Shown here: positions 18,291 through 62,609 of the stretch, one piece after another | Position numbering within the stretch: position 1 is the first letter of the stretch | Layout of the letters: every line of letters begins with the position of its first letter | Assembly (NCBI RefSeq): GCF_026571515.1 | Contig: NW_026866645.1 | Span: forward strand, 62,001 to 126,000 | Direction of reading: 5' to 3' | DNA: 64,000 bases | From: Ruditapes philippinarum | Lineage: Eukaryota | Notes under the pieces: generated by a model | What the model was told of the DNA's origin: nothing | What the model saw: the letters and a program-made list of their open reading frames with translations, nothing else | The model's database searches: none | Position numbers and translations under genes: made by a program

Positions 18291-18975
18291 CTACAAACAG
18301 AAGTCTATTCCAAAATGCGAAACTACTATTACAATTCATAAATAGTCAGAAACATAATAAACTATTTTGCAAGATGTAAAATAATAATAATTATAATTTC
18401 AATTATTCTACGGGAGACCTCTTTGCTTATGAATAATATCCATATTTCACTTTTAAATTAATAATATCATAATATTCAAGCCAACTTAAACTAAACCAAA
18501 TCAGCACGGTGTCCAGTTATGGCCATCGCGGCACACACATACTCGAAAAAACAAAAACACGAGAATACGATGGTGAAAAGTCGAAATAACGAATCCACGA
18601 TGGTGAAAATCTGAATTTCAATCATGGTTAAACACAACATTACATCCAATTTTCAAATCGGGGTGTGTTGCGGTGTCGACATTTTACCATTATTATAATT
18701 TCGCCTTTTCATCACCGTGGTCCGATTTTTCTTTATGATTATGGTATATATCGCAAAAGCATAGCTAATTCGTTAATCATTCATTGACTTACAATTGACT
18801 TGAAACAATGCTAACTGTATCTGTATGATATTTGTCCATTTTCACAAAAGAAATGCATTTTTATCATATTAAAAGTTTGGTATAATGTCGGATACATGTA
18901 AATTTTGTTAAACTACAAGCAGTTGCACAGTCCATTGTTTGTAAAAGAAGACTACACAGGAGTCGTATTGAATTA

Positions 18976-19311
18976 TTGCAGCCGAATAATTGTTTTTTGT
19001 TTTCGTTGTTTTTGTCAACTCAGAAAGCATACAGAAAATAAGGAATGTTTGTCCTTTGAAGTAAAATGTAAATAAAAATATCTTGCAATAAAGCGAGACA
19101 TTTAAAATTGGTCATGAAGTGAAAAGCTTATGTATGTATGTTAATGTTTTTTATATACTGTTTTTATTGACGACTCGCAAAATAAATCGTGTCATTCTGC
19201 AGTAAATCATGCGTCTTATTCAAAATCATATCCGATTCGGCGGCTTTGCAGCCGAATAATTGTTTATTGTTTTCGTTGTTATTGTCAAATCAGAAAGCCA
19301 TACAGAAAATA
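18976..19311 (+). repeat. ~65-bp direct repeat pair near the centre of the inverted duplication
   Basis: TTGCAGCCGAATAATTGTTT...CAGAAAATAA at about 18976-19040 and 19246-19311. Confidence 0.8.
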
Positions 19312-43242: not shown

Positions 43243-46200
43243 CAAGGGCGTAGTGCCCATTACGCACAATACGCACTTGCGTATAAAAAAAATCCGAAGG
43301 TAAAAAAAAAGAAGAAGAGAAAATCTAAGTTTTAACGATTTTATCGCTATAGATCTAAATAATTTATCCCTTTTTGTTTACAAAATATTTCGTTGCGTCT
43401 TACTGTTTAGTTTATGACGTAATTACTTGTACTATGTAATGAGTGTAAACTATGATTGCGTCACTCTCGATCGTGTGACGTTTCTAGTTATCATTGTAAT
43501 TTATGTGCAATAGGAATGTAAGTTTCTATTAAACTCGAAGCATTTACAAACCTATTGCGCAGAGATAAATGTAAATCTCAGCATTGATTAATCTACATGG
43601 AATAAGGAATCTCGTTACTTAAACTAGGCTCATAATAACTTATCGTTGGTTACACACTCGGAAAAAAAAGATTATCAAGACTTTTTTTAAAGAATTAAAT
43701 CAATCCTTTCAAGAACAATTCCTTTGGAATATCTCTAATTTAAAACAACTTAAAATCTTCAATTTTCATTAATCTAAATTTAAGTCATCAACTCGGTTAT
43801 CAAAATTCAAAGAAACATCCGCCAAATTCCAGGACAAGCGACCCTGTTTAAGGTGCTTAAACAGGACCTCATTCAAACCAATAATGAATCTGGCCAGGAA
43901 GAAACAAAGCAGAATTCACAAGACATGGCATGTGACCCTCTTGTGATCAGCAAATAAGACACCAATGTCGCGTCTCCTTCTCCCCCTTCTTCCTCTTCCC
44001 CTGTATCTTCCTCTGCTTCTTCTTCTGAACCCTCTAGAACCGTTACAAGCTCCCTTGGAGCATGATTCCTGGATATCGGAAGTCTTGATACCAAATGCCG
44101 ACTTAGAATGCCAGATTCTAAAAAATATGCTGTCCTTACCACACGGTTCGAGCCACATAGAGGTTGGGTTGCACCTCTCAGAGAACTCGGAAAAAGGGCA
44201 GCAAGTAGGCGAGTACCGGACTTTGTATTTGAGCACGAAAAGCATCCCTACTTAAGATACAGCCCTTTACTTGATGGGGTATTTTGTGCTCCATGTTTTG
44301 CCTTTAATGCAGCTGAAAATGTGCTTGTTGCTCGTCCGTTGATTGACTGGAGCAACGCAAGGAAAGTCGTTGATGGGCACACACGATCAAAAGAGCACAT
44401 AAATTCCATCACAAGAGCCGACCACTTTGTACGCATCTGCAGGAAGGAAGAGCAGAATGTGGTCGAGTTCGGATCAACGGCCTACCGGCAGAAAGTCCAA
44501 AAGAACAGGGAGGCGTTAACAGCCATCATTGAGGCCATTATTCTTTGTGGGCAACAAAATATAGCCTTACGCGGTAAAATTGAAAGCCGCAGCAACATTA
44601 GAGCTCTACTCAACTACCGTGCAAAAGCTGACGCCTCTCTGAAGGAACACATGACATCAGCACCAAAACATGCCCAGTATACGAGCCCAGAAATACAGAA
44701 CGAATTTATCTCACTCTGTGGTAAACAAATTTCTAGCTCGATTACCCAACGATGCCAAAACGCTAAGTACTTCACGGTTATGGCAGATGAGTCTGCAGAC
44801 GTGAGCGACACTGAACAATTTGCGTTCTGTGTACGCTACGTTGATCGGGAAAGTTCGGGTGACCATGTGGTCCGTGAAGAATTTTTGTCCTTTGTTGTTG
44901 CTGAAAGTACAACAGGTGAGGCCCTGACCACTCTTCTGACAGGAGAAATAAGAAAACATGACCTTGACCCAGCATTGAATGTTGGCCAAGGGTACGACGG
45001 CGCTAGGAACATGGCGGGCAGGATTCGTGGCGTGCAAGCAAGGTTTGCTGAGGCGTATCCACATGCTAAGTATGTCCACTGCCGAAACCACCGTCTGAAC
45101 CTAGCTATCTGCCATGCCTGTCACACAAAGTTGCTCAGCTGACACCTGAAATAATGGAGGACATAAGAAACGAATATGCCAATTTCATTGACATGGATGA
45201 ACTTGACACAGAACTTGAGGTGTGGAGGCATCGACTATCTCATGGCGCTATGGTCAACAATCTTGTGGAAGGCGTCGATGCTACCTACCAATTTCTGCCG
45301 AACATCCACATCATTTTCAAGATACTTTTGACAATGTCAGTGTCAACAGCAACAGCTGAAAGGTCATTTAGCAGTCTAAGGAGACTGGAAACGTACCTTC
45401 GCAGCACCATGTCAGAACAGCGACTCAGTGGTCTTGCTCTGTTGCATATCCACCGCAGTCACACCAGAGACATTGACAAGGTGCTGAGTGACTTTGATGC
45501 ATCGGGTCATAGACGAATTGCAATCGTTTTTGACAATGCCGAGAGAGACGCATCCTCTGATGACGAGTAAATCGATAAGCAAAAAAAAAAAACTAGCTTG
45601 TTACCTTTGAACAAAAAAAAACAAAAACAAAAACACAAAAAGAAAAAAAACAAACTGTCGCGGGGATATCTATGGGTAAGTCCGTTGTTACTTTCTCATC
45701 ACCGCCAGAGGAGAACTATGGAGTGGTCGAAAGAGTTTCAATGGTCATTAATTAGACCATTTACGATCTCTTTGTATCTGGTAAGTTTCCTGACTTTCTT
45801 ACGATGAAATAGAAGTGTTCTCCGAGCAAGTTGTTCTTACGAAACTGATTGATCAGAAATGATATAAACTTGTTATCTGATTAATTGCGTTTTACATTTG
45901 ATCGGGCATTCATACATAATTTAAACCAATTACATGATCTGCATCCTCAGTCGAACTTCACATGGAAAAATTGTTGTGTATGCTTATATGCACGTGTTAA
46001 ATAAGATAACTACAAGGCGAACATTGCATTTTTTCCACAAATCTATTCGAAGTTATAATGAAATAAGTTAAAAAATAAAAAGAGCTGCTGTATGTTTTTA
46101 GGCAAAAAAATGATGAAAATGCTCCATGCTTTACGTGCGAAAGGTTCTTCAAGACATGCCAGAGCCCACATTTAACATCTATTTTTTCAAAATTTTCCGG

Positions 46201-46970: not shown

Positions 46971-48155
46971 TTAAAAGACAACCTCAGGTGCCCTTTCGTG
47001 CATTCAGACACGTGAGGGCACCTAAGTAGAACCATCAAAAGACTATGTCAAGCATCAAACTCTCAGCGATGAAGGGCAAGTGGTTTGAACGACTTTAATC
47101 ACTCGGCCTCGAACAGAACAACAAAATATATATTGCTATAATAGCTATTCTAAGTCATAATTACTATTTCAACATCATTAAGAACATAATTGAATTTTAT
47201 GTGCCACACTATGTCATTATTATTATTCAAGCGAGTTTACCGTTTCCCCCCTAAAATATCTTAAGTTTATGCCCCTTCAATTAAAAGTGTACTTATCTCA
47301 CTTCGGGGTTTATCAGTATATTTGTATCTGGGTCATCAGTAAAATCTTATAAATACATCAATGATATAAGTGAGTGCAATTTTGGTATGTATGTTTTAAA
47401 ATAATGCTTACATTTTCTTTGTTTTCAATGAATTTTTAATTATCTTTAATATGAACGGTATTGTATTTAAAAACGTGAACAAACTTTTGATTTTATCAAA
47501 ATTTACAAAAGGGGACATCTTAATGCTTATGACAACAGTTTACTTTAAACATGGAAAAGTTTTATATATAATTGCCCCCCCCCCTCATTATTCTCATACT
47601 GGAACGCACGTGTATGAAAACAACGTGCACGCGTGCAGAATCTAAGAAAAATAATTTATAGCAAATGTTTTATAAAGCAGATATTTCATAACTAAGCATT
47701 TGTAATTACGTGATTACGTGATTCCTACAATCTGACATTAAATAGTTGAATATAATATGAAAATCTTTGAAAGAACCACAATGGGGTAACAAAACCTCAT
47801 ATTTCATATATCTTACTTTTTATCAACTGGGGTACTACAGTGTTACGGAAAATATGTGCAAAAGATGATAAATTGATGAATGTTATTTAGTGCAATTCTT
47901 AGTTTGTTTTTTTTCCAGTTTAAGGTCATTTTGTACAATAAATATGATTATTCTGGAAAAGTAGAAAAAAAAACTGAAGGATTTGAAATTTTGCACACGA
48001 ATTATTTGCATCGGCATTCATCAAATATTATAAAAATCTAAAAATAAATAAAAATAAATACAATAAAATCAGTCCGGTCATGTGAAAAACTCAATGTTAT
48101 GGTCCATTTAAGAACGAATTCTCCATTTGTTGATTATGTCAATTCTTAAATAATT

Positions 48156-48389
48156 GAGCCGTGTCATGACAAAACCAACATAATGGGTTTGCGACCAGCA
48201 TGGATCCAGACCAGCCTGCGCATCCACGCAGTCTGATCAGGATCCATGCTGTTCGCTATCAGTTTCTCTACTTTAATAGGGTTTGTAAGCGAACAGCATG
48301 GATCCTGATCAGACTGCGCGGATGCGCAGGCTGGTCTGGATCCATGCTGGTCGCAAACCTTTTATGTTGGTTATGTCGTGAAACGGCTC
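48156..48389. mobile_element. Sola-like palindromic MITE
   Basis: GAGCCG...CGGCTC termini, AATT duplicated on both sides, arms of about 100 bp. Confidence 0.85.
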
Positions 48390-48419
48390 AATTGTCACTT
48401 ATTTTAAATCAAAGTAAGA

Positions 48420-51400
48420 ATGGCACATGGAAATCTTAGTTGTCTCGCTGGGTTACTTATTGTGCTGTCTGCGCATGCGTATAGCGGAGACGCGCTGACT
48501 GAGATGCTGAAAGCTGGGCTGGGTAATATCGTCAAAGAAACCATCAACAGTCCTGTCACATATGAAAAAGGAACAATTCCTACATGGTTGTCAGGTAATT
48601 AAAATTCTTGAAATTAATCTTTAGTCCATTTAATTGTTGGGGGAAATATTCCTACGCTTACGTGGTCATTTTTTTTTTTTTTTACAAATTAAAAATATAA
48701 AACATTTCAATTTGCTCTTTGTTCAAAATTTCTTATAAGATCATAGAACAATGTTATTAAGTATTAAATAAACAGACAATAACGGTCATATATGTATTAT
48801 GATTGATAGAAAAATAGAGATCTAATCTGCATGTAAGCCTACTTCTTTAAAGAAGGATTGCATGTATATATGCTATCGCGTGATTTGGTGTTTTACAAAA
48901 TAACTGTAGTATTCAAATAAGTTAAGATTAATTGACATGTATATTCTTAAAAGATATTTCATTATTAAAGTTAATGATGTTTTGCATTTTGCATACTGTG
49001 AACCAAAGTGTTATCATGGTGATGTCAGTCTTGTTTGATATTGATGGGTCTTATAAAAAATCTGGAGCAAAGTTCTCCCTCGGAAGCATTAATCAAAAAC
49101 AAAACAGTCAATTACATGAAAATTGCAGATTCGGTTTGATTTAGTCGGTACATGTGGGATAATGAATAAGTGCAACATTCCTAAAGTGCCCCTAGCACCG
49201 GCTTCAGTGGTACATACTTATCCACACTTTAAAGTATTGGTCTTAGCTTGTCGGTTCTTGCAGGCATCTGAAATAGCCTCTGACATTAACACTTACTCCC
49301 TTCGACCGCCAGTGATAAGTTGTTACCAGCACTAGCCAGGTCAGCCTGCACTGATAAGTTGTTGCCAGCACTAGTTAGGTCAGCCTGCACCTCTACGCAG
49401 TGCGACTGGGTCCGACTATTGCCTGTTTGTTTTAAAATTTTGGTATTATTATTCCCTAAATAGCCTATGGAAAGTCCACCTCCCCTAGCATTGGCTCTAG
49501 TCTGTCGATTGTTAAGTGCTTCTATTCGGCAAATCGATTTGTTGATGTTATCAAAAGAGGGTCGAGTATGATATGGTGCGTATGTTATGAATAAGCAAAA
49601 ATATCAAAAATATCAACGCTTGAATCCCCCCCCCACACACACACAATGGAAGCTGGCCTATGGCATTTAAGAAATTCAGTAGGACACAGATGAATTGTTG
49701 CTTTACAAACGATATTTGATTCTAAATCTTGCATCCCTTTTTGTAACATTCGACCAAAGAATTTGAAATTCTTAATTTGAATTGCCTTGTTACTGAAACA
49801 TATAAAATTATTCAAAACAGAAATATTTGTCCATTCACGATTATTTAGGTAACTTTATTCGACACGCATGTGGAACGTTTGGTGAGACAGATCACAGAAA
49901 CAAAAATCTACCCAACTATATAGAACATTTGTTTGACTGCTTCGAGATGGGAAGCAAGTTCAAAATAAACAACGGAAGGGTGACTTTTACAAACAGGTAA
50001 GAAAACAGTGCACTAGTTGCGGTGATAGGAACACTTTAAAGATCCTGTAACACAATTTTTATGGTTTTATATCATAAATTTGATGCGGAAATTAAGATTT
50101 ATCAATATCGTAAGTTCCAAAAAGCATTATTTATTAAGATAATACCCAATTTAACATTTCAAGTAAATAAAGGGTGGTAAATAAAAATTTATTTTTTATG
50201 AAGTCTTAGTTAAACTTTTCAATGAGGAATGAATGCATATAGTTCAATGATTACATATAATGCACACAACTATTTGCAGTACATGTTTTTCCATGTTTGA
50301 AAATTGTTTTATAGGCATAATTATATACATGATATATATAATTTCAGTTAAGTATGGTAGCAACCTCAATTATAACATACAAGATCATGAATTGGTTTAT
50401 AGATATGTGAAAAGTTCATAGATTTATATGCATGTACGCCAATTTCTTTATTTCAAATACATGTATATAGTTTAAATGAACCTTTTATATAATAAATATG
50501 TGAATAGTTCATAGATATTCATATTCGCCAATTTCGTTTTTAAAATGATAAAATTGAACCTGACATTTTATATAAAGTAACAAAACTTTGTTGTACATAT
50601 ATATTGGTAACACTTTTGGTAAAGTTGTTAATCTTGCATCTATATTGAAAACTCGCATTTTATCTAGTGAAGTTTGAAATTTGTTGTCAAATCTTGCTAC
50701 AGTAGCTTTGAACTACAGTGAGCCGCTTTACTGGGGTTATATTGTATATATTTTTTTCTATTTCAGATGGTACGATACAACAGTGGAGGATATTTTCAAC
50801 ACATATCGCCGTCAAATGAATGCTTCTTCTATGTTTGTCCATTCAATATATTCACAAATGGTAAGCTGATATCTTCTTTTACATTCAGTATGAATATTGT
50901 TCCCGTAATTTATTCTAAAATGATGGATGATGTTGTCAACATGCCCATTTGTAGCTGTGAGCTGGGTAAGGGTTAAGAGTTGCATTAATGCACTGCTTAT
51001 AACAAAACAAATATATAAAAAATAATAATAATATTAACATTATTTAAGAGTACATGTATTATAGAGGAACAGTAATTTGCATGTTTACACGCTTTGACAG
51101 CACTATAAACAAGAACTGTCGGAGGACAGCATTTGCTCGACTATTCAAAAATTGTCACAAGGGTGTTTTATTATGAATAATAATGCTATTTACCTATGAA
51201 TACATAAAATTGACCGAAAAGGTACAAAGGCTTGTTATTAAGATGTTTTATCAAGTAAATCACTACTTTATTATTATGAATGCATAAAAAATGTCCCCAA
51301 AAAAAGGCATAAACACTTCAGTAGTTATGGAGATAACAGCTTACAAGCAAACCTTTACCATGAATTTCTAAGTTGAAAAAGGGGAGAAAAATCAGCCTAA

Positions 51401-54400
51401 ATGCAAGATAGAATTATGGATCTTGGTCAATGACCTTCAATGAATTATGATTCTAAATGCATATGTGAAGTCTGAAATAAATATCTTTAATAGTTATTGA
51501 GATTGAGATATGTAAAACTTGCGTGTTAACATTAACCAAGAGATTAAGTAGAAAAGGGGAGATGAATCAGCCTAAATTCGAGTAGAGTTATGGAACTAAA
51601 TTCGCTTGGTCAGTGACATACAATTATGACTCTCAAATTACGACCTTAAGTACATGTGTAAAGTTTCAAGTAAATATCTTTGAAGACCGTTAACCAAAAG
51701 TTACAAAGGGCCAAATAATTCTGCAAATATTGCAGGCAGAGTTATGCAATTTTGCAAACTAATGTACATTGTTACTAAAAAAAAGTATTGTAAATTTCAA
51801 TTGAATATCTCAAGCAATAATTGAGATATTTGACTTTACAAAAAACTTTTACCAAAATTTCTAAGTTATAAAGGGGCATAATTCTGTAAATATTATAGGC
51901 AGAGTTATCCAACTTGTCAATCTGATGTACATTGTTACTATAAATAAGTATTGTAGGTTTCAATTGAATATCTCAAGCAATAATTGAGATATTTGACTTT
52001 ACAAAAAACTTAAACCAACGCAGACGCCGACACGGACGCTGACGCCGACACCGACGCCGACGCCGGGGCGACTACAATAGCTCTCATATTCTTCGAATAG
52101 TCGAGCTAAAAATGACATATAATAGATAAAGTTGTATATATGAATTAAGTGCTCGAATTGATCAAATCATTTTATCAAGTGTATTTGTTTAATATCATCG
52201 AACGTTATTGTAACCCCACAGTTAAAGTAAGGAAGACTAACAGGGGTTTTGATGAGGTTTAAGAGTCTGCAGCTCAACAACATGATCTTTGGTTTGATAC
52301 TTTATGGGGTCATTAACTTGTTTCCATGTATTTAACGAATGCTGGTTGATGTCTGGAAGAGGAATCAATAGCGGTTAAAAACGTAGTTTTGAGTTCGATT
52401 GTGCTTACTGAATCACTCTCAAATTCGTTCCGGAAACCAACCGGTACTAAACAAGGAGTGTAAAATTTCTTTATCATGGAATAAATGGCAAGCCCCGTGG
52501 CAGGGTTTGAAGCAACGCTGTCAGGCATCCTTAGATTACTAATTTTAGGCGTTAAGCACTAAGCATTGCCACCACTCTAAAATGCCTCATCAAAGCTTCC
52601 ATCACAATCAAACTAATTTCAGAATAATAGTGTTTTGTTTTCATCTGAAGATTACTTTCTGTTAAGCAGATCGAAGATGTTTATTACTTCGTTAGAAATG
52701 TTTTATTGTTTTTATCTCAAGAATGCCAACCAGATCGACAAATGGTTCGGGAATATGTCGGCCAAGAACAAAGTTAGTAAGATACCAAATGTTAGTTGGT
52801 GGTTGGTCGGTAATCAAGCCATTGCGATGTCTGGACAACCGATCGGTAACGGTTATATAAAGTTACATTCTTTAATAGAAACGGTTCTATAATTTTATAC
52901 TCTGTAAAAAAATGGTTATATAATGCTATATTATCTAAGAAAAACGTTTATATAAGAAATAATGTTGGTCTCTGTGGTTATATCGGCAGTTTAAAAGAGG
53001 TTTTGAATATTGATGTGTAGATATTGACCATGAAGGCCTCGGTCAATATCACATAAGCCTGTAAATACTATACAAATATGGACTTTTTAGCTGTTGAATA
53101 TGATGTGATATGTACTGAAAAAATTAATATTGACCGAGGCGATAGCCGAGGTCAATATTAATTTTTCAGTACATATCACATCATATTCAACAGCTAAAAA
53201 GTACATATCTGTTTTATTATATAATTTATAAATAGCTTTTATATGGTTTATCACATCCACAGGCGCTAGTCACATAATCAAATATTTTACATAATCGGTC
53301 TATACAGTATATGTATATAAAGATATCTTTATATACATATATAGACCGATTATGTAAAATATTTGATTATGTGACTAGCGCCTGTGATCACATCTGCCAT
53401 TGCATACGAAGGAAATCATTATTTTTCAGCTTGTCTACTGTTTCCATAATTTGGTCATTTCCATTGGCATGCTAATCCCTATTGTTCTTAAAAATATAAA
53501 AAGGTAAATAAAATAGACTAATTTGACTCTTATGTACACCCCACTCAAAGTTTTTTTTTTCAGAATAATAACAAACTTGGCGTGACGTCATATCAAAGTC
53601 TCGCGTCTTTTAGGGATTTCCAGAAAATCTATTTTTAGAAGAAAAACCGGTGAATATAATCTGAAAATCTATTTTTAGGAAAAAAACAGTGAATATACTC
53701 TGATATTGACCTGTTATTTTTTACAAAAAGTTGCTTGTTAGCCAATCAGGGAAAGGCATTTCAAAGCTATTTATAGATTATATAATAATACATGATATTC
53801 AATGGCTGACAGGTCGATAACTGTATACATTTCTATAAGAAAATGCCTATAAATGTTATACTTTATACTAAAAAAACGTTTTCATAAGGTTATATTTTAT
53901 AAGAAAAACGTTTATAAAACGTTATGGTGGAACTCTATAAACTAAACAGCTATATATGTAGATCTATAATGTTATATATATTTTTTTAAAATGGCTATAT
54001 CATAGATATATTATGTGATAAATACAGGATATTTTTGGCATAATGAATGCCATATCAGGGTGCTACTTTGAACGTTTTTAATGTATTGGCTAAATTCGGG
54101 TTTTTCTTCTAGAATAACACGAAGTGCCTGCCTACTGACAAATGCACTGTGCTGTCAGATTTTGATTTTAATTGGGAAGCTACATGTACGTCACATAATA
54201 CTATATGGTGTTCTCTTCGGGGCATCGTTTTTTCGCATCGACAATCTCTGATATAGATAAAACTCAATACCCGTACGTTTATGCATAGGGACTATTGTCA
54301 TATGGCCGGTTGATATCTGCTACATGCCTTTTGCATATAAATATTTTATTTGGGTGTGTAACTTTTCAATAAACGTGCAACTTACAACACGTTACAAACA

Positions 54401-57400
54401 GATTTTTAACATTCAAACCGAAATAAGGACAGTTTGGTTTATCGTTGCATTTTGCTGTTGTTCTTTTGTATGTTGCTATTGTTGTTGACGTTTTTGTTGT
54501 TTTTCCCAAAACATTTTTTCTGAAAGGTGTTATAATTGACCCCAATGACGTCACACAAAAGGGCTACATTCAGTATGATGATAACAACCTAGGTGTTCCG
54601 GACACAACTCAGTACTTGTTTAGTAATAATCCAGCTCACGCACAAACAGAAGCAGATGGCACTCTGTGGAGTACAGTTAGTGTTGTTAAGTTCGAGACCC
54701 AATCTCACCTTAAAATCAAGTAAGGACAGTGTTAAAAAAAAATTTTGATATGACGAATAATCATTACATTTAAGAAAAAAAGTATCCCAAAAATTGATGT
54801 TATCGCTAAATAAAATCACTGTTTGCAGTTCAGATGCAAGGAATCATATCACGAGACTGTAGCCCGTGTGATATAATGCTGCGCAACTGGACGGCAAACT
54901 CGGAATATATGCGACAAACACCTTTATTTACATACATTTTCGTTCCTTGTATGTTTATGGTAAAATTCAGTTGGTTTTAGAATTTTGCGTATTGTTCGGC
55001 TGTAGAATATTAACGCTCAACTGATAATGCGACTGTACTTTATATGCAAAAGTATGCACCTATCAATGCCAAAAGCTTTAAAGTACACTATTTGTTCTGT
55101 TACTTTGCACAGAAAAAACATTTTTCTGTCTGCGAAATCTCTTATTCAAGGAAATTAGGATCGGGCTAGTTTTAGATGCTTATTTATACTTCCACGTCAT
55201 TGCTTTTTTGAATACCGCTTCATAATTCATTGAATAGACAGATTTCACCCCCAATTTCACTTAACAACGTTTCTTTATCTCATGAATAATAGAACTTTTA
55301 TTTCCATACTAGACGCGTGGTTTACAAAATAGGCCATGACCTAGGACGCCATGTTGTTGGAACATTCAACTACGAGGACTCAAATCTCACGAGATGTAAA
55401 GGCACGAGACCATATCCAGACTTTGGTGCAAGATTCGGATACCTTCATTCAATTGCTATGACAGAAAACTATATTATCCTACCAGAAACAGCACTGATGG
55501 ATGACCCTTGTGTATTTAGTAAGTGTTGATTTACTCACTGAATGTGTGTAGGCCCAATTACTTCTTTAAACATTTATTAAAGGGAGGGCGTCCGTTGCAA
55601 AAATTCCAGAGTTGTAAAGTGTTCCTTTTGAAAACTGCTTTTGAAAATGTGAACCTGTATGTATAGCAATTTTGACTGTTGGCAGAGTTTTATACTTGTC
55701 CGTACATTTCGTAACTACTCGTTCATATAGGGGCGGGGCGTCATGTGTGACTTAAGATTGTTTAATTTTGTGAATCTACTTTAGTCTTATTTAACATGTT
55801 ACTATGTAAACGCACTCTTGTAGTTCTGCAACTGGAAACAAGTTTTCTTAAACTCTATTTTCTGTATTTAAGTTTTACATTTCAGTTGTACATACTTTTG
55901 TCTTGTCTCAGGAACAGATTTATATCAAAAGTGTGCCGATTTGCTTATATATTATATGTAATGGAAGATACGAACTTGTAAATTTGTTATTTTTTCATTT
56001 CATTTTTGTTAAGATCTATGTGTAAACCTTCACTTAAAAGTTTGGATTAAGAGGCAATTTATTTCCTTTGCACGGATACAGTTAAAATTGCTATACATAC
56101 AAGTTCGCATTTTCAAAAGTAGTTTTCAATAGGAACACTTTAAATGTCTGGAATTTTGGCAACGAACGCCCTCCATAGATTTCAAGCCGGTATTAGAATT
56201 ATTATCTATTTTTCACTAAGAAAATAATCTTTACTTTTGATACGATTTTAAAGCCTTATCTGCATATCACAAATAATTTATTGCTATGAATGTCGATGAT
56301 GCATTACTAGATATGTAAATTCTGTTTTCAGCTTAATATGTCATCTCTAATAAAATCATTATATTTCCTGTTGTTTCAAGACAGTTTATTAACACAATCA
56401 ACATTAAGAAAAACAAAATATCTTAAGAACGGCCAAATTGAAAATGTTGCAGGCCCGGTTTGATTGAGCATGTGCATGGACTATATTGGTAACTGCGTGC
56501 TATCGTCCAAGACCCCAGCAGCGTTTTAATCAGAACTAAACATTAAAACATGAAAGGTGGTGAAATTTTGGAATGTGTTTCATGCGGCGATTATCAAACA
56601 ATAGTTTGTCCTTTCTGATATGCTTTCAGCAAGGTATGACAAGTACGAGCCTTTCTTACCACAAGGTTTCCAGTATGAATCGACAGGCTATTCTAGACTT
56701 CTTGTGATGAGAAAATCTGACGGCCAGTTCATAGCTAATATAACCATGCCGCCATTCTTTGCAACTCATCAGGTAATTCTACGACTATGCAACGATGAAA
56801 ATTGGTTCCCAACATTAATACGGAAACTAAACATTGTTTAAGGGGAAGGAATTCCCGACGATGACGACTCAGCTGTTAACTTAGTCTGGTTCCCTACCTA
56901 CATTTACTACGTAGTGTAAGGGGAGGGAACTCCAGACTGTCTCAATCTGCTTAATTTGTGCAATTGACGTGTCTTGATTTCATATTTTTTTACCTGTCGA
57001 TTTTCAATTCTTTTAAATTCGGATGAACATTTGTGTTGGTCAGAAAACAGTGAAGAGACTTGTCCGACTCCAAGGATATACAGGCCGGGTTTGCTTCATG
57101 TTCGTGGCAAAGGTTTATCACTTATTTAAATTGTTGAAGAGTGATAGTTTGTTTGCATTAATGCCTACACGTTTGCCTGATATTACGACATATACCGGCG
57201 CTGTACGTTTCTGATTAACTATTCAGTACATATGATTACCAATATTTCGGTACGTTGTCAGCTGATATACAAAGGTCACATTAACTCAAAGGTAAAACGT
57301 CTGCTTCTATCGATCTATACAGTTTCCTTGTTCTGCTAATAATCACTTTTTATTTATGAACCTTGTATTTAACTATTAACTAAATTGAAACTGTCCAGAT

Positions 57401-60400
57401 TAATCATAATACGAGTATAACTGATCCCTGTACCGAAAAAGTGCCTACTCTGACTGCATTACGTCTGCAGCCTTTGCTGATCCTAATGTTTTTGGCATAG
57501 GGAACATTCTAAATAAAAGGGAATATTCCAACAACAAAATTATATGAAAATTGCAGACTTTGGTCGAGTCTGTTCATGAGTTATGACGGAAATTGTAATA
57601 TCATAAATGCAAGTTCGTTCCAAAATGTCACGCTAAATTTACTGAACTTTTCAAACGGACTACTTCATTTGCTATTTTCTTACTTTCCATTATCAAGTTT
57701 AAGGATAGAAATATTAACATGCAAAAAAGTCAATTTGTGAACGATAAAAATGAAAATTTAAATTGGTCAGCGAACATTATAGAGCCTAGTCAGACTACAA
57801 CGATGTGAAAGCTGACCTGACTCTAAACTGGTGGCAAATCTTTTCACTTTCGCTTTAAGTAGGTTTAAGGGTTTCAATTAATTCTTACAGCGCCGTTATA
57901 TGTCGTAACGCCACTTAATGTCGCACTTGCCGTTTAATATCGTACCATTACCGCTAAATGTCGCAACCGCCGTTTTATGTCGCACACTCTTCTGTCGTTA
58001 AATGTCGCACGATTTTCCATTTCCGTTCGATGTCGCAAAATGTATTCATGACAAAGTATAGCTTAGCTAGTGATTTTAAATCACAATAAACATCGATTGA
58101 TTGCTTACAAATATTTAGTAACTTTGAGACATAAAGGAAAATCTCGATATATCTACCGACCCAAGATGAAAAATGTTTCTAGAAGTGGATAGCAAAATGA
58201 AAAATAAAGTATTCAAATGTGTTTTACCACAAAGAGAGCCTTTGGCATTTGTTACGCTCGTCAAATTGTAATATCAACAAAGATGACTTCAATTTCAAAC
58301 AAGTATGTTGTACTTGGCAGAAAATCCCTTCCTATCTGATACTAGTAGATAGCTACTCCTAAGATCACTTTCATAACGTTAATATTGGCATAATACAGTT
58401 GTTAAACACGGATTTAGATATTGCGACATTTGACGATAGCGTTGTAACATTTAACGGTGAAGAGAAATGGTGCGACATTTAACGTTATCATTTCGACTTT
58501 AAACTTTAAAATATTTTGAGACAATTAACGGCGGTTGTGACATTTAGCGGCAATAGCGCGACTATTGGCGGCAAGTGTGACATTTAGCGTCATTGCGATA
58601 TTTAACGTCTATTCCATTTATTGCAAACTATCTCGCATAAACTATATTCATAGAAATCTTACAGGCCCGGTCTGCCCCAGAAAATGATTTTATATATATT
58701 CCTCAAAAGCTTTTTTTTGTATACTTTTAAAGTTTCCAAAACTCATTGCCATTTTTTATCTGCTGCTTTTTGGCAGATTATATAGTTATAGTGATTTAGT
58801 ATTTTATCATCATGCAACCAATAATGTTGTTATAATTAAGAATTCAGTGTGTCCAATGTATGGACGTTTGGTACCGGGCTAATCCGGCTTGTTTGTTACC
58901 ACAGCTGAATGCCTTTGAAGATGGTAACATTATCCATATGGACATGCTGACGTATAACGATTCCTCTATCTTTGACAAACATATGTTTGTGGAAAATCTT
59001 CTCTCTGAGGTATAATATTATTATATAATCTATTTCTTATTCAGGGCTGGGAATCAAAACTTAATAATCAAAAGCAACAGAACATTGCTATACACCGCAA
59101 ATTATCTGGGTTTTTTTATCTAGCGCAAGTGATAATTCCATAAAATAGAAATATATTGCCAAAATTATCCCTGTTGAAAAGACTGCCAAAAATACAACTG
59201 CGTCGTATCATATTTTATTTTCAACTGCGTCGTATCATTTCGTAAAAATCATTATTTTCTTAGAAAATAAACATCTCTTTTTAATGAAAGTTTAGTAAAT
59301 GATGCAAAATTATGTTTTGAAGTTTATGGTGAACTCTGAAAACGAGTATATAATTGATTTGAAGGAAAAAACGATAGATAAAGCAATATGAACTGCGTCG
59401 TATCCACACATTTTAATAAAAATTCTGCCCCGCTTCGAGTTGCAAGTTCGCTATAACTTTTGTTTTACAAAATAGTTGTGCAAGCAACATATACCGAACG
59501 AAGCGGAAAATAGTGTAGCGTGTTAATACATATATCTGGTTTTCAGTCATTTCCAACAAAAAGAGTTATAAACAAAAACATACATTTTTCGTTCCAAGAT
59601 GGCGGCGTTTGTTTACATTTTGTAGGATACGACGCAGTTTTGATTCCCAGCCCTGTTATTATTTGATAACATTTTCTAAATTTTACACTTACACGGTATA
59701 TATGTTTTTTAAACTTGTTTTCATTAAAGGGAGAATAATCTTCTGCAATGTACAAAACAATTGTTATCAAAAAAAAAAAAAAAAAAAAAAAAAAAACGCG
59801 GCAAATTTTCATTACTCCAGCTGATGCTGTTCACAAGTCGCGCTTATATTAGGGTAAAAAAGGTACAAATGTATAAGAATTTAGTCGGTAGTGTACGAAA
59901 GACCGGTGAGGACATTTCAACTTCATGAATTCCCGATTACAACTTCATGAATTCTGGATTTCAACTTCACGAATTCACGATTTCAACTTCGTGAATTCAC
60001 GAAATCAACTTCACGAATTCACGATTTCAACTTCACGAATTCACGATTTCAACTTCACGAATTCACGATTTCAACTTCGTGAATTCACGAAATCAACTTT
60101 ACGAATTCACGATTTCAACTTCACGAATTCACGATTTCAACTTCACGAATTCACTATTTCACGATTTCAACTTCGTGAATTCACGAAATCAACTTCACGA
60201 ATTCACGATTTCAACTTCACGAATTCACGATTTCAACTTCATGAAGTTGAAATCGTGAATTCGTGAAGTTGAAATTGTGAATTCATGAAGTTGAAACAGT
60301 CCATATAAGGACATTAAAATTTATTGAGCTACATACATCATAGAGAGTGGTCGGTCGGCACGGATGTGTCGGCCAGTCTGGTTGTACACTGGCGGCAAAG

Positions 60401-62609
60401 ACAAATATCCCTGTCAATTTTAGCATGGTACCATTGAATATTGTGTTGTTGTTTTTTTCCTCAAGAATGTTTACACGACAAACTTATCCCGCATATCTAT
60501 AAGCATTTCCGGGAAGACAGCGCGCATGCGCAATTTACGGGGTGACGGGAAGTCACCGTCTGCGTTTGAAATGCCAACTATTAACCATGCATACAATGGG
60601 AAGAAATATGAATATGCGTACATGACAAGAAACTTTGATAGAAGGGAACAAAATGCTATTACAAAGGTAAACCAGTTCTTTAGCACTTAGACGATTGTTA
60701 AATATTAAATGATTAGGATTTAAATAGCAAAATTAAACAGGCAATCTTAATGTAACAAAGTTATTTTTTCTATTCAGATTTTTTGATTGTTCGCGTTCAA
60801 ATGTGTATTTATTCATTTATGTTTATACATTTGTACATGTATTTGTCAAATATAACCTTAGTTTGTTGGCTGAAATATTTGGAACCTAACTTATTTGTTG
60901 TGTTTGTACGAATAGCAAAGATTAAATTTGAACTTGTTTAAGATTTTATTGATTATGTTTTATTTTTATTTTACTTTCTGATTATTTCTTGTAAGGAAGA
61001 TATGCACCTAGCTTACAGAAAGTCGGTGGTTCTATGCTTGCCTAAAATTATACACGAAGGGGCACCTGAGGTCTTTCTTCTCCACTATAGCTGTAAAGTT
61101 GCCAGATGACGACCTTCTGTAGTGGAGAAGTGTAACTGTAAAAAAATATAAATAAGGTGTGCATGCATGATATAACTGCCGTCCTGATACGAACCAGAAT
61201 TATTTGTTGAACTATTCCATGTCTCATGATATCATTTATAATTATTATAATTCTAGTTGCATGTTGATACTGGCGTGGAACAAGAGTTTATTCTACCAGA
61301 AGGGATGTTTGTACAAGATCCTCACTTTGTTTCTCGACAAGGGGCAATAACTGAGGACGATGGTGTAATACTGGCCCAAGGCGTTGATGGAATCAAACAT
61401 AAAGGTAAATCTAAAAAAAGATTTTTATCCTGAATATCTTTCAATCTGACTAAAGGTCAGACCTACTTATTTCTAACACGTGAGACGTTTTAGTAGCTGG
61501 TTTAAATCAAATTGTACTTGTAGATATCTACCTACCGTGTAGCCAAAGAAAGACAAAATGAATCAGTGACAAAAAGACATTTATACATATTATAAAGCGA
61601 TCGCCTCGTTTTTAACTGTCGAAATTGAAATAAGCTAAATTCATAATAAAAGATATAAATGTACATAATTTACTTTCTTGTAAAATAATATTTGTTGTGT
61701 GTTAATTATGTTCTGTGTTGATATATATTAATTTCCATCATTTTATCTTTAAATATAGAACTCAAAGGTGCTTGCTCTGCACAGGTTGTACTGTTATACA
61801 AAAAAGAATTATATAAGTACTTATTTGACAGTATTCGATAGTATTTTGATAATAATTTTAAATCGCATGCGTATTTGCAAAGAATGTTCGGTTGTTTACG
61901 AGAGGTATTGCCGTAAAAAGGTTTAATATAATATCATTTTGGCATTTTATTATGGGAAGAATTGTTACTGTCCTTATAAAACTGGTACGGCTATACAGAG
62001 GTTCGTTCTGTAGAGGTTATACTGTATTTTTCTATACTCTAGCACATAATTATACCTGTTAATCTATAAATAGTATATTTCCGGAATGAATAACTGTCAA
62101 TTTCAATGCCGTTATTTTTACATTTTCTAATAAATGTTGGTTCACTTTAAGCATTCATGATAATTGTCGACGCTAGAACAATGATGATGATTGCCCACGT
62201 GACTGCACCGGATATAGCACTGTTCGGACAACACAGCAGGTATTATAATATATCTGTTTACTGCTCCCCCCCCCCCCCCCCCCCCCCAAAAAAAAACAAA
62301 AACAAAACAACAACAACAAACAAACAAACTCCCTCACAATTGCAGATTCCCATCCCTCCCCCAATCTATCTCACACTTGGCAGAGTACCGCCTTTAACAG
62401 TTCTATAGCATCAATTTCCGCTCACGTAAGTTTGTGTATATTAATAAAACTTCGTATGGCTATGTTATTTTAATCATCAGTTTAATTTTAACTGTTTACA
62501 AATACTTTGGGTTTTTTTGTTTTTTTTTTTTTTGTTTTTTCATTGTAGGTTCTTTCCCATGACAGTTGGAAAACCTGACACAGGAATTGATGGCACTATA
62601 GTGGGCTAG
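48420..62609 (+). CDS. Carotenoid cleavage oxygenase (RPE65/BCO family)-like protein, 561 aa, with predicted signal peptide. Exons 48420-48594, 49849-49996, 50767-50860, 52722-52845, 54527-54719, 55313-55518, 56630-56772, 58905-59009, 60466-60666, 61257-61404, 62152-62239, 62549-62609
   Basis: 12 GT-AG exons join in frame (1686 nt). Family motifs GTIPTWLSG, HLFD, PAHA (His1), YLHSIAMTENY (His2), FFATHQLNAFE (His3), EMPTIN, EDDGVIL, FGQHSRFF (His4). AATAAA at 62691 and 62716. Confidence 0.9.
51107..52112 (-). mobile_element. Helentron-associated interspersed element (HINE/DINE-like)
   Basis: Minus strand: TTTTTAGCTCGACTATTC subTIR, (GGCGTC)n microsatellite, internal ~170-bp tandem units, 3' GAATAGTCGAGC plus CTGTC..GACAG hairpin, T-rich ends. 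Confidence 0.85.
52385..52580 (-). mobile_element. tRNA-derived CORE-like SINE, degenerate
   Basis: Minus strand has a B-box-like GCTTCAAACCC followed by TTAGTACCGGTTGGTTTCCGGAACGAATTTGAG; family from memory. Confidence 0.55.
53021..53208. repeat. Tandem hairpins (53021-53050, 53076-53208) of a non-autonomous palindromic element
   Basis: Near-perfect arms of about 60 bp around CCGAGGCGATAGCCGAGG. Confidence 0.75.
53258..53386. mobile_element. 129-bp palindromic MITE with 8-bp TSD (P- or hAT-type)
   Basis: CACAGGCG...CGCCTGTG, with ATCACATC at 53250-53257 and 53387-53394. Confidence 0.9.
55583..56174. mobile_element. MITE with ~90-bp TIRs in oxygenase intron 6
   Basis: GGAGGGCGTCCGTTGC...GCAATTTT and AAAATTGC...GCAACGAACGCCCTCC. 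Confidence 0.8.
57890..58610. mobile_element. Foldback element with opposed ~22-bp repeat arms
   Basis: CCGTTAAATGTCGCA-type units at 57890-58040 and their complement at 58425-58610. Confidence 0.7.
59042..59655. mobile_element. hAT-like MITE
   Basis: TIR CAGGGCTGGGAATCAAAACT; flanks TTCTTATT/TTATTATT (8-bp TSD, 1 mismatch); internal AACTGCGTCGTATC repeats. Confidence 0.85.
59894..60297 (+). repeat. Homogeneous 22-bp tandem array (TTTCAACTTCACGAATTCACGA) with terminus TACGAAAGACCGGTG and orientation flip at 60241
   Basis: About 15 forward units followed by 2-3 reverse units. Confidence 0.95.

What the first reader, a model, noticed from the sequence alone, without database searches (positions are those of the whole stretch)
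48420..62609. Carotenoid-oxygenase family member that looks secreted and glycosylated
Seen: an intact 561-aa ORF starting MAHGNLSCLAGLLIVLSAHAYSG-DA (hydrophobic core, small-residue cleavage site). The mature chain has 7 N-X-S/T sequons (NAS, NMS, NVS, NLT, NIT, NDS, NLS) and exactly 4 Cys. Two Cys replace residues of conserved motifs (RNGPG becomes RHACG, FDG becomes FDC). All four Fe histidines are kept. Known: characterised animal BCO1, RPE65 and NinaB work on the cytosolic side and BCO2 is mitochondrial. Inference: a lumenal or extracellular alkene-cleaving enzyme or pigment-binding protein, for example in gut, haemolymph or shell/mantle pigmentation. This is the strongest candidate for undescribed host biology here.
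Basis: partly seen in the sequence, partly recalled or inferred. Interest (0 to 1): 0.8.

Follow-up and report, generated by a model that had tools for sequence, protein, structure and literature searches.

The report
Clam secreted-type carotenoid oxygenase gene
This is a real, transcribed Manila clam gene for a carotenoid-oxygenase-fold protein that is built to leave the cell; secreted, sugar-coated enzymes of this kind are already known from lancelets, but this one belongs to a separate, seemingly undescribed branch and has a partly eroded iron site.

Summary
Twelve GT..AG exons (48420-62609, + strand) encode 561 aa. Every exon peptide is an exact piece of the RefSeq protein XP_060575784.1, "carotenoid isomerooxygenase-like" of Ruditapes philippinarum. 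An RNA-run contig joins exons 1 to 4.

It has 7 mature sequons, 4 mature Cys, RHACG and FDC, and four Fe histidines.

Secretion is supported by comparison, not by the sequon count, which is no more than chance. In its clade of bivalves, Capitella and plankton, 19 of 22 members have the hydrophobic N-terminus, the four Cys are invariant, and four sequon positions recur. Ten of 22 also carry a GPI-like hydrophobic C-tail.

"Undescribed biology" is overstated. Secreted, N-glycosylated, disulfide-bonded animal CCOs (BCOL; lancelet BCOLg, PDB 9plv) are in print (2017, 2020, 2026).

This clade is nevertheless not BCOL. It forms a separate clade in the tree (99/98). It has other cysteines, Glu/Glu/Glu rather than Asp/Asp/Glu in the second shell, and C-terminal extensions.

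The window copy alone has lost two of three second-shell Glu (E177G, E484D). A 94%-identical transcript variant also has H290Y, so catalysis may be impaired.

The parts
48420..48594 (+). Exon 1: ATG, leader and the start of the mature chain (residues 1-58 plus 1 base)
   Evidence: Peptide is an exact match in P0058 at residue 1. Donor is CAG|gtaatt. In-frame stop 12 nt upstream. X1 contig record 2 lies on 48415-48592 and runs on into exon 2; X3 contig lies on 48445-48592.
48420..48479 (+). Predicted signal peptide, residues 1-20 (h-region LSCLAGLLIVLSA; A18-H19-A20|Y21)
   Evidence: Kyte-Doolittle 11-residue maximum 2.80 at residue 6. Orthologs have AHA|FS and (A/T)HA|YT at the same place. In the AF2 model it is a helix at 2-18 with pLDDT about 60, outside the propeller. 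The Atlas structural match covers 23-548 only. No SignalP was available; the -3/-1 rule is recalled.
49849..49996 (+). Exon 2: RHACG (C66, codon 49869-49871) and FDC (C89, codon 49938-49940)
   Evidence: Exact match in P0058 at residue 60. Pfam RPE65 positions 27-68, 17.9 bits. X1 contig piece at 49847-49993. Both Cys present in all relatives that cover them.
50767..50860 (+). Exon 3: sequon N126 (NAS)
   Evidence: Exact match at residue 109. Joint 50859>52721 with GT..AG in X3 and X1. A sequon lies within 2 columns in 25 of 30 relatives.
52722..52845 (+). Exon 4: sequons N150 and N162; G177 (codon 52833-52835), where 29 of 29 relatives have Glu
   Evidence: Exact match at residue 140. The acceptor at 52722 is confirmed by RNA contigs. 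E177G. It aligns with the Glu of AMTET in 6vcf.
54527..54719 (+). Exon 5: first Fe-His H218 (codon 54637-54639), in PAHAQ where relatives mostly have PAHE
   Evidence: Exact match at residue 182. H218 is invariant in A1.
55313..55518 (+). Exon 6: sequon N269, C273 (55395-55397), second Fe-His H290 (55446-55448), C311 (55509-55511)
   Evidence: Exact match at residue 246. Pfam positions 178-220. C273 and C311 are invariant. H290 is Tyr in variant P0190.
56630..56772 (+). Exon 7: sequon N350, third Fe-His H360 (56767-56769)
   Evidence: Exact match at residue 315. H360 is invariant.
58905..59009 (+). Exon 8: sequon N379
   Evidence: Exact match at residue 362. Pfam positions 260-298.
60466..60666 (+). 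Exon 9: sequon N402; second-shell E431 (kept)
   Evidence: Exact match at residue 397. AFEMP aligns with RPE65 residues 414-418, QAFEF, so E431 corresponds to E417.
61257..61404 (+). Exon 10: D484 (codon 61317-61319), where 27 of 27 relatives have Glu; EDDGV motif
   Evidence: Exact match at residue 464. E484D. It aligns with the Glu of SEP or GEP in RPE65, NinaB and 6vcf.
62152..62239 (+). Exon 11: fourth Fe-His H540 (62232-62234)
   Evidence: Exact match at residue 514. H540 is invariant.
62549..62609 (+). Exon 12: RFFP plus a hydrophilic 17-residue end, then stop TAA; no hydrophobic tail
   Evidence: Exact match at residue 543. RFFP matches the C-termini of paralogs L001 and L002. C-terminal KD maximum is 0.55, against 2.1-3.3 in tail-bearing relatives.

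Best explanation
The locus is the annotated Manila clam gene for XP_060575784.1. It encodes a seven-bladed-propeller protein of the carotenoid cleavage oxygenase (RPE65) superfamily that is made for the secretory pathway.

Inferred steps:
- A leader of about 20 residues takes the chain into the ER and is cut at AHA|YS.
- Up to seven Asn are glycosylated; four positions are conserved in the clade.
- The four clade-invariant cysteines form two disulfides. The simplest pairing is C66-C89 and C273-C311.
- Because this copy lacks the hydrophobic C-terminal tail that its paralog and 10 of 22 clade members carry, it is released as a soluble extracellular protein.

It belongs to a lophotrochozoan clade (bivalves, the annelid Capitella, plankton transcripts). 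This clade is separate from the known secreted BCOL clade but probably works like it: an extracellular non-haem-iron dioxygenase acting on dietary (algal) carotenoids or apocarotenoids.

This particular copy keeps the four iron histidines. It has lost two of the three glutamates that hold them (E177G, E484D), so I expect weak, altered or absent cleavage activity. A ligand-binding role is possible.

Shown: the gene model, its splicing, fold, family, clade, and residue states. Inferred: secretion, glycosylation, disulfides, substrate, and the loss of activity.
For: Model and transcript:
- 12 of 12 exon peptides are exact in P0058.
- X1 contig of 939 nt joins 48415-48592 | 49847-49993 | 50764-50859 | 52721-52847.
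- 14 runs from 9 studies hold 0.30-0.38 of the sampled words, against an exon share of 0.40. Three of them are on record as RNA and 11 are guessed to be RNA.
- P0190, a 561-aa product on a contig of at most 1829 nt, starts with the same leader.

Family and fold:
- PF03055 scores 218.6 bits against a cut-off of 27.
- AF2 gives pLDDT 88.6 and pTM 0.88.
- Foldseek hits 6vcf with TM 0.90 by target, then NinaB, RPE65 and ACO.

Secretory signs:
- A hydrophobic N-terminus in 19 of 22 clade rows. The 3 misses start inside the domain (P0059, P0029) or carry about 70 extra N-terminal residues ahead of a hydrophobic stretch (P0026).
- RxxCG plus FDC in 19 of 19 close relatives, and in 0 of 127 other CCOs fetched.
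- C273 and C311 are invariant; C66 and C89 are present wherever covered.
- Sequon positions N126 25/30, N150 16/31, N350 16/33, N402 18/32.
- Hydrophobic C-tails in 10 of 22 clade rows against 0 of 26 BCOL rows.
- No PDPC motif.

Separate clade:
- This clade 99/98, BCOL 100/100, and the split {this clade + 2 nematode rows} | {BCOL + others} 100/100.
- PDB bit scores for P0058: 6vcf 124.8, NinaB 68.4, RPE65 65.4, BCOLg 59.0. The clam's own BCOL paralog scores 270.7 on BCOLg.

Eroded iron site:
- E177G, with 29 of 29 others Glu; E484D, with 27 of 27 others Glu.
- 8 of 86 near-invariant columns are changed, against 0-4 in 17 other bivalve rows.
- H290Y in P0190.
- The preprint states that replacing second-shell Glu in RPE65 and BCO1 severely affects activity (PMC13734108, passage seen).
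Against: - No signal-peptide, GPI or localisation predictor was available. The leader call rests on hydropathy, a recalled -3/-1 rule and conservation. The n-region (MAHGN) has no Lys or Arg.
- The sequon count alone is not above chance.
- Disulfides could not be checked, because the structure tool gives no coordinates.
- The two raw-read RNA runs show next to no depth on the exons: X21 at most 4.6 and X23 0 in exon bins. Expression is therefore low or tissue-limited, and the tissue is unknown because run names are coded.
- X1 is only guessed to be RNA.
- Acceleration of the window lineage is modest. Unique changes are 56 against 31 (p=0.01) with one outgroup, but not significant with two others.
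- BCOLg is active with Asp at two second-shell sites, so E484D alone need not hurt.
- No canonical BCO/NinaB/RPE65 rows were in the tree, so the origin of the clade is open.
- The 2017 abstract puts mollusc and nematode sequences in the BCOL assemblage, and my clade groups with nematode rows. The authors may therefore already count such proteins as BCOL.
Confidence: 0.6

Rival explanations
1. It is simply a member of the already described BCOL family, so nothing here goes beyond the 2017-2026 papers.
For: - It has a signal-peptide-like leader, no PDPCK and conserved sequons, as BCOL does.
- The 2017 abstract defines BCOL as holding lancelet, nematode and molluscan sequences. My clade groups with two nematode rows at 100/100.
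- In the quick tree this clade plus nematodes plus BCOL were one side of a branch against the 16 others, with support 62.
- Table 1 of the 2017 paper has mollusc entries of 553 and 570 aa that I could not fetch.
Against: - It is not nested in the clade that holds the Lottia 522-aa, Octopus 530-aa and Branchiostoma proteins, which is supported at 100/100.
- The wider grouping appears in only 44% of bootstrap trees.
- None of this clade was among the 120 listed hits of the clam BCOL paralog.
- Clade consensus for the second shell is Glu/Glu/Glu, against Asp/Asp/Glu in BCOLg and in L002.
- There is no Cys after residue 311, so it has no equivalent of BCOLg C422-C449.
- C-terminal extensions of 16-46 residues are present, 10 of 22 hydrophobic, against 0 of 26 hydrophobic in BCOL.
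- The Capitella members of this clade (ELT96834.1, ELU09374.1, ELU07236.1) are not the Capitella entries in Table 1.
Confidence: 0.22
2. The hydrophobic N-terminus is an uncleaved signal anchor or an ER-targeting peptide, so the protein works inside the cell on ER or endomembranes and is not secreted.
For: [quoted passage not shown]
- The n-region lacks basic residues.
- No predictor was run.
Against: - A conserved small-X-small site sits directly before a conserved Tyr in orthologs.
- There is no KDEL- or HDEL-like end; the protein ends in TIVG.
- Four invariant Cys and conserved sequons fit a lumenal or extracellular chain.
- Relatives carry GPI-like tails.
- BCOLg, with a comparable leader, is secreted from HEK cells.
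Confidence: 0.08
3. It is a decaying duplicate: a transcribed gene that has lost its enzymatic function and is drifting, with no new role.
For: - E177G and E484D are unique among 27-29 relatives, and 8 of 86 near-invariant columns are changed.
- H290Y occurs in a 94%-identical variant, with 31 differences in 561 residues.
- Depth is very low in two raw-read RNA runs.
- Two P0190-type substitutions (S22N at 48484, R122H at 50808) are seen in contigs of X1 and X3, so divergent alleles circulate.
Against: - Both versions keep an intact 561-codon frame with no gaps.
- All four Cys, all seven mature sequon positions (NLS becomes NIS) and three or four of the His are kept.
- Spliced contigs are present in runs of 9 studies.
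- dN/dS could not be computed, because the transcript DNA could not be fetched.
Confidence: 0.1

Closest known systems
BCOLg of Branchiostoma floridae (BCOL clade; PDB 9plv; PMC5643517, PMC7221588, PMC13734108)
   Same: Animal CCO-fold protein with a cleavable signal peptide, N-glycans, a disulfide, four Fe-His and no PDPCK motif. It is proposed to act extracellularly on dietary carotenoids (passages seen).
   Different: - It is a separate clade in my tree, and P0058 scores only 59 bits on it.
- BCOLg has Asp/Asp/Glu in the second shell. This clade has Glu/Glu/Glu and the window copy Gly/Glu/Asp.
- BCOLg's disulfide is C422-C449. Here the Cys are at 66, 89, 273 and 311.
- This clade has C-terminal extensions, often hydrophobic.
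- The clam has its own BCOL genes elsewhere (L001, L002).
Nitrosotalea devanaterra carotenoid cleavage dioxygenase (PDB 6vcf)
   Same: It is the best sequence match (124.8 bits) and the best structural match (TM 0.90 by target, rmsd 3.1, 22% identity). The propeller and His positions are the same.
   Different: It is an archaeal enzyme of 472 residues with no leader. It has RNGPA and FDG where the clam has RHACG and FDC, and Glu at both positions that the clam copy has lost.
Canonical animal CCOs: NinaB (8fty), RPE65 (3fsn), BCO1/BCO2
   Same: Same fold and His set. RefSeq names the clam protein after NinaB ('carotenoid isomerooxygenase-like').
   Different: They score 65-68 bits only. They have a PDPCK palmitoylation motif and intracellular location (papers), and no leader. 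Their place in the tree relative to this clade was not tested, because no such sequences could be fetched.
Own paralog XP_060584886.1/XP_060584884.1 (P0054/P0192, contig C3201) and the Mercenaria ortholog P0055
   Same: Same clade, leader, four Cys and sequon positions. Identity to P0058 is 58% for P0054 and 76% for P0055.
   Different: Both keep Glu/Glu/Glu. P0054 ends in a hydrophobic GPI-like tail (KD maximum 3.02), which the window protein lacks.

Membership tests
RPE65 / carotenoid cleavage oxygenase superfamily (PF03055) | Pfam match above the gathering score over the whole domain | tested here: met
   P0058 scores 218.6 bits against a cut-off of 27, residues 43-545 on profile positions 9-469. 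Exon by exon, 5 of 9 pieces matched, all below the cut-off.
RPE65 / carotenoid cleavage oxygenase superfamily (PF03055) | Seven-bladed beta-propeller fold | tested here: met
   AF2 gives pLDDT 88.6 and pTM 0.88. Foldseek top hits are 6vcf, 8fty, RPE65 and ACO, at E 1e-28 to 1e-36.
RPE65 / carotenoid cleavage oxygenase superfamily (PF03055) | Four iron-binding histidines | tested here: met
   H218, H290, H360 and H540 are present in the window. Variant P0190 has Y290.
RPE65 / carotenoid cleavage oxygenase superfamily (PF03055) | Three second-shell glutamates (RPE65 E148, E417, E469) | tested here: not met
   The window has G177, E431 and D484. The other clade members have Glu at 29/29 and 27/27. 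E148 and E417 numbering is from the preprint; E469 is recalled.
BCOL clade (Poliakov et al. 2017) | N-terminal signal peptide | tested here: met
   Shown by hydropathy and the AXA site only. No SignalP or TargetP was available.
BCOL clade (Poliakov et al. 2017) | Absence of the PDPC(K) motif | tested here: met
   No PDPC in P0058 or any of the 19 close relatives.
BCOL clade (Poliakov et al. 2017) | Falls inside the clade that holds lancelet BCOLs and the Table 1 mollusc entries | tested here: not met
   The BCOL rows (including Lottia 522 aa, Octopus 530 aa and Branchiostoma) form one clade at 100/100 without it. It sits across a 100/100 split, together with two nematode rows. A wider assemblage is not excluded (62 in the quick tree, 44% of bootstraps).
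BCOL clade (Poliakov et al. 2017) | Asp at two of the three second-shell positions | tested here: not met
   The clade consensus is Glu at all three and the window has Gly/Glu/Asp. BCOLg and the clam BCOL L002 have Asp where the window has E431, and Glu where it has D484.
BCOL clade (Poliakov et al. 2017) | Disulfide equivalent to BCOLg C422-C449 | tested here: not met
   P0058 has no Cys after residue 311.
BCOL clade (Poliakov et al. 2017) | Secretion and N-glycosylation shown by experiment | not testable with these tools
   Needs expression, a PNGase F test and medium fractionation.
Canonical metazoan BCO1/BCO2/NinaB/RPE65 | PDPCK motif; no secretory leader | tested here: not met
   No PDPC; a leader is present.
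Canonical metazoan BCO1/BCO2/NinaB/RPE65 | Phylogenetic placement within the clade | not tested
Only PDB bit scores of 65-68 are available.
GPI-anchored subgroup of the new clade | Hydrophobic C-terminal segment after a short hydrophilic spacer | tested here: not met
   The window's C-terminal KD maximum is 0.55. Ten of 22 clade rows reach 2.0 or more, including paralog P0054. GPI signal architecture is recalled; no predictor was run.

The most novel reading that the evidence does not exclude
The gene represents a second lineage of extracellular carotenoid-oxygenase-fold proteins, not the described BCOL. This lineage is lophotrochozoan-wide, stapled by two clade-specific disulfides, and ancestrally tethered to the cell surface by a GPI-like tail. 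The window copy would be a tail-less, released derivative whose iron site is being dismantled (E177G, E484D, and H290Y in circulating alleles). On this reading it is a pseudoenzyme turned carotenoid or apocarotenoid binder in clam body fluids or gut.
Probability: 0.15. Interest if true: 0.6.

Novelty: new variant of a known kind. Interest (0 to 1): 0.4.

Why it matters
Secreted carotenoid oxygenases have only just been established, with one lancelet structure.

If this clade is distinct, then filter-feeding molluscs and annelids carry two different families of extracellular CCOs. One would be soluble (BCOL). The other would often be surface-tethered, have a canonical Glu shell and its own disulfides. 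That widens where carotenoid and retinoid chemistry can happen in animals: gut lumen, cell surface or haemolymph.

It also gives naturally soluble, glycosylated CCOs for structural work.

The window copy, with two second-shell Glu lost and a His-to-Tyr allele, is a natural test of how much of the iron site a CCO fold can lose while staying under selection.

For clam aquaculture it is a candidate gene for tissue or shell carotenoid colour, but nothing here shows that.

Tried and rejected
Steps that led nowhere or were limited:
- The clam's near-intronless BCOL paralogs (L001, L002) as guides for exon finding gave only weak tblastn hits (best E 7.5e-4), so I used splice sites instead.
- Single exons against the PDB gave E 0.83, which is useless.
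- The representative search with exon 6 gave 42 hits. Four of them (P0012, P0019, P0033, P0039) were repeat-rich false positives.
- I tried to obtain canonical BCO/NinaB/RPE65 sequences for the tree with the third word search (P0058 residues 280-545). It returned only the clade, two nematode proteins and two unnamed ones.
- The Atlas search returns no ids.
- The AU test of 'this clade + BCOL without nematodes' did not finish and I dropped it.
- Cys-Cys distances could not be measured, because structure prediction returns no coordinates.
- Tissue of expression is unknown, because run names are coded.
- Literature searches for bivalve work on these genes, for shell, secretome or haemolymph proteomes, and for GPI-anchored CCOs listed nothing relevant (listings only). 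Accession numbers of the clade occur in no main text.
- Supplements are closed and I did not ask for them. Supplementary trees and tables of PMC5643517 and Table S2 of PMC13734108 may list members of this clade.

Considered and rejected:
- Mitochondrial presequence. The leader is hydrophobic, not amphipathic-basic.
- Contamination or HGT. The gene has 12 spliced exons, and bivalve orthologs lie on chromosome-sized contigs.
- Enrichment of sequons as evidence.

Absence of oyster, scallop or gastropod members means little, because those are word-based searches with a length window.

Full report
**What is there.** The window is AT-rich animal DNA. It lies on contig C15132 of a 1.4-Gb genome. From open frames and splice sites I rebuilt a 12-exon gene on the + strand:
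- Exon 1: 48420-48594
- Exon 2: 49849-49996
- Exon 3: 50767-50860
- Exon 4: 52722-52845
- Exon 5: 54527-54719
- Exon 6: 55313-55518
- Exon 7: 56630-56772
- Exon 8: 58905-59009
- Exon 9: 60466-60666
- Exon 10: 61257-61404
- Exon 11: 62152-62239
- Exon 12: 62549-62609

All introns are GT..AG, the phases fit, and the total is 1686 nt, which is 561 codons plus TAA.

The model was searched exon by exon. The exon-6 peptide found relatives in the representative library (42 hits). One full-length relative, P0006, then found P0058 in the word search.

P0058 is XP_060575784.1, 'carotenoid isomerooxygenase-like [Ruditapes philippinarum]'. Each of the 12 exon peptides, translated alone, is an exact substring of it, in order. 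From there on I used this database record.

**Transcription.**
- Fourteen runs from nine studies hold 0.30-0.38 of the sampled words of a stretch whose exons make up 0.40 of it. Three of them are on record as RNA and 11 are guessed to be RNA.
- Reads and contigs were laid on 48200-54199. One 939-nt contig of run X1 (guessed RNA) lies on 48415-48592, 49847-49993, 50764-50859 and 52721-52847. That is exons 1-2-3-4, with the 2-3-nt ambiguity expected at AG/GT borders.
- Run X3 (on record as RNA) shows the 50859>52721 GT..AG joint and separate pieces on exons 1 to 4.
- Against strong expression: the two raw-read RNA runs have almost no depth on the exons (X21 at most 4.6, X23 zero).
- A cluster mate, P0190, is a 561-aa product seen on contigs of at most 1829 nt, far shorter than the 14-kb locus. 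It starts with the same leader.
- An in-frame stop lies 12 nt before the ATG.

The following are all confirmed:
- five Cys, one in the leader and four in the mature chain;
- RHACG and FDC in place of the usual RNGPG-type and FDG motifs;
- four Fe histidines.

Two corrections apply:
- Seven sequons is not more than chance (shuffle mean 4.9; 20% of shuffles reach 7).
- The likely cleavage site is A18-H19-A20|Y21. The nearest orthologs have AHA|FS or (A/T)HA|YT at that place, and most of the clade has a small residue before a conserved Tyr. The -3/-1 rule is recalled, and no predictor was available.

**Family and fold.**
- PF03055 scores 218.6 bits over residues 43-545.
- AlphaFold2 with a 27-row clade alignment gives pLDDT 88.6 and pTM 0.88. 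Residues 2-18 form a lower-confidence helix outside the propeller.
- Foldseek finds the archaeal NdCCD 6vcf first (TM 0.90 by target), then NinaB, RPE65, ACO and C. elegans BCMO.
- The Atlas's own model aligns over residues 23-548 only.

**Relatives.** The clade holds the following:
- bivalves: Mercenaria (P0055, 76% identical overall, the nearest), Mytilus, Dreissena, Mactra and Mya, plus several unnamed transcript-sized contigs;
- the annelid Capitella (ELT96834.1, ELU09374.1, ELU07236.1);
- unnamed metagenome and metatranscriptome proteins, including one from a marine eukaryote catalogue.

The clam has one full paralog on C3201 (P0054/P0192; exon 6 is 60% identical) and a partial copy on C8909.

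**Features shared across the clade.**
- RxxCG plus FDC occur in 19 of 19 close relatives and in 0 of 127 other CCOs fetched.
- C273 and C311 are invariant. C66 and C89 are present wherever the row covers them.
- Sequons recur at N126 (25/30), N150 (16/31), N350 (16/33) and N402 (18/32).
- A hydrophobic N-terminus occurs in 19 of 22 rows. The three misses start inside the domain (P0059, P0029) or carry about 70 extra N-terminal residues ahead of a hydrophobic stretch (P0026).
- All rows have 16-46 residues after the last His motif. In 10 of 22 these end in a hydrophobic stretch with almost nothing behind it, which is the architecture of a GPI signal (recalled). None of 26 BCOL rows has this.
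- The window protein ends hydrophilic (…GIDGTIVG), so it would be soluble.

A leader combined with such a tail only makes sense for proteins translocated into the ER. This is the strongest comparative argument for the secretory reading.

**What is already known.**
- Poliakov et al. 2017 (PMC5643517; I read the abstract, sections 5 and 6, and passages) defined the BCOL clade. It lacks PDPCK. Table 1 gives TargetP signal-peptide predictions for Crassostrea, Aplysia, Octopus, Lottia, Capitella and lancelet entries.
- The 2020 paper (PMC7221588; passages) speaks of 'the secreted BCOL subfamily' and saw BCOLg leave HEK cells.
- The October 2026 preprint (PMC13734108; passages) gives the 2.4-Å structure of secreted BCOLg. 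It has four N-glycans, a C422-C449 disulfide and Asp at two second-shell positions. The authors propose gut-lumen cleavage of algal carotenoids.

So a 'secreted, glycosylated animal CCO' is a known kind.

**Is this gene BCOL?** The clam has BCOL genes of its own. Two near-intronless ones on C12642 (L001, L002) hit BCOLg 9plv at 1.9e-79. Their relatives include the Lottia 522-aa and Octopus 530-aa proteins and Branchiostoma BCOLs. None of the window's clade is among the 120 listed hits of L002.

P0058 scores 59 bits on BCOLg. That is less than on NdCCD (124.8), NinaB (68.4) or RPE65 (65.4).

I built a careful ML tree of 66 rows: 22 of this clade, 26 BCOL, 2 nematode and 16 other unnamed CCOs. 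I chose these from 218 fetched proteins and left out fragments and near-duplicates. The results were:
- this clade 99/98;
- BCOL 100/100;
- the split {this clade + nematodes} | {BCOL + others} 100/100.

Relations on the BCOL side are unresolved (45-53). The 16 others form one side in only 44% of bootstrap trees. The quick tree had put all three animal groups on one side at 62.

So the clade is not inside BCOL proper. Whether it belongs to a wider 'BCOL assemblage' is open. The 2017 abstract does mention nematode and mollusc sequences. No canonical BCO/NinaB/RPE65 rows could be obtained, so its relation to them was not tested. Both long branches (this clade and the nematodes) may attract each other.

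Feature by feature it differs from BCOL:
- second shell Glu/Glu/Glu against Asp/Asp/Glu;
- other cysteines;
- C-terminal extensions.

Its Capitella members are not the Capitella entries of Table 1. Its accessions occur in no main text I could search. Supplements are closed and may differ.

**The twist in this copy.** I aligned 33 clade sequences.
- The three second-shell Glu are invariant except in the window protein and its variant. At E177G, 29 of 29 others have Glu. At E484D, 27 of 27 others have Glu.
- G177 aligns with the Glu of AMTET in 6vcf. D484 aligns with the Glu of SEP or GEP in RPE65, NinaB and 6vcf. E431 aligns with RPE65 E417.
- The window protein differs at 8 of 86 near-invariant columns, against 0-4 for 17 other bivalve rows; Capitella P0026 differs at 12.
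- Its lineage has 56 unique changes against 31 for the Mercenaria ortholog with one outgroup (p=0.01). With two other outgroups the difference is not significant.
- P0190, 530/561 identical with no gaps, carries the same G177 and D484 and also Tyr at the second Fe-His (H290Y).
- Two P0190-type substitutions are seen in contigs of runs X1 and X3: S22N at 48484 and R122H at 50808. Divergent alleles of this gene therefore circulate in that organism's samples (codon mapping done by hand).

The preprint states that replacing second-shell Glu in RPE65 (E148, E417) and BCO1 severely affects activity, and that E148D and E417Q are pathogenic. I therefore expect this copy to be a weak or altered enzyme, or a binder. 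That is inference. BCOLg shows that Asp can work in another context.

**Verdict.** Secretion is well supported by comparison but untested by predictor or experiment. The claim of undescribed biology is only partly right.

The kind is known. The clade appears to be an undescribed variant of it: its own disulfides, a canonical Glu shell and frequent GPI-like tails. This copy shows a partly dismantled iron site.

The gene itself is already annotated in RefSeq. Two earlier notes on secreted terpenoid-type enzymes in the same clam are parallel leads that I did not test.

Noticed in passing
window 48152-48393: A hairpin-type repeat with 106-nt arms, 94% complementary, 30 nt apart. It ends 27 nt before the ATG. 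RNA raw-read depth there is about 8000 per strand class in X21 and about 350 in X23, with many strand-switch joints and loose ends. It is evidently a very abundant repeat family (MITE- or SINE-like) and not part of the gene's transcript.
   Followed up: partly
G000:C3201 (L004 covers 9000-18999); proteins P0054/P0192: This paralog of the window gene keeps all three second-shell Glu and ends in a hydrophobic GPI-like tail (…NNIPVITILILLMHYILQT). Ten of 22 clade members have such tails and 0 of 26 BCOL rows do. I found no paper on GPI-anchored carotenoid oxygenases (listing only).
   Followed up: partly
G000:C12642:487000-490400 and 494300-497700 (L001, L002): Two BCOL-type genes about 6 kb apart on opposite strands. 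Each has nearly its whole coding sequence in one open frame of 451-463 aa, whereas the window gene has 12 exons. L002 hits BCOLg (9plv) at 1.9e-79. C6693 holds a third copy with two stops. The whole-genome Pfam scan gave 32 matches, with clusters on C13702, C3539, C13317, C7309, C6226 and C8895.
   Followed up: partly
protein P0190 (cluster mate of P0058): A 94%-identical 561-aa variant from a transcript-sized contig has Tyr in place of the second iron histidine (H290Y), plus 30 other substitutions, 8 of them in exon 1. The gene is unusually polymorphic, or the variant comes from a close relative.
   Followed up: partly
G000:C8909:120824-120961 (L005); protein P0194: A third match to exon 1 (48% identity) lies in a 230-aa 'uncharacterized protein LOC132760015'. 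It is probably a partial duplicate of the paralog.
   Followed up: no
window 44108-45142 (+): An intronless 344-aa ORF in a GC-richer patch matches DUF4371 (72 bits). This domain is usually seen in transposase-derived proteins (recalled).
   Followed up: partly
   Followed up: no
window 59925-60266 (intron 8): A tandemly repeated unit that reads as an open frame (…NSRFQLHEFTISTSRIHDFNFT… several times). It is a minisatellite inside the intron.
   Followed up: no
proteins P0146-P0171 (hits of L002): A large set of unnamed metagenome and transcriptome CCOs at about 30% identity to clam BCOL. All begin with a leader followed by '(E/D)NVGWKKYF'. It is another secreted-looking CCO group, of unknown organisms.
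   Followed up: no
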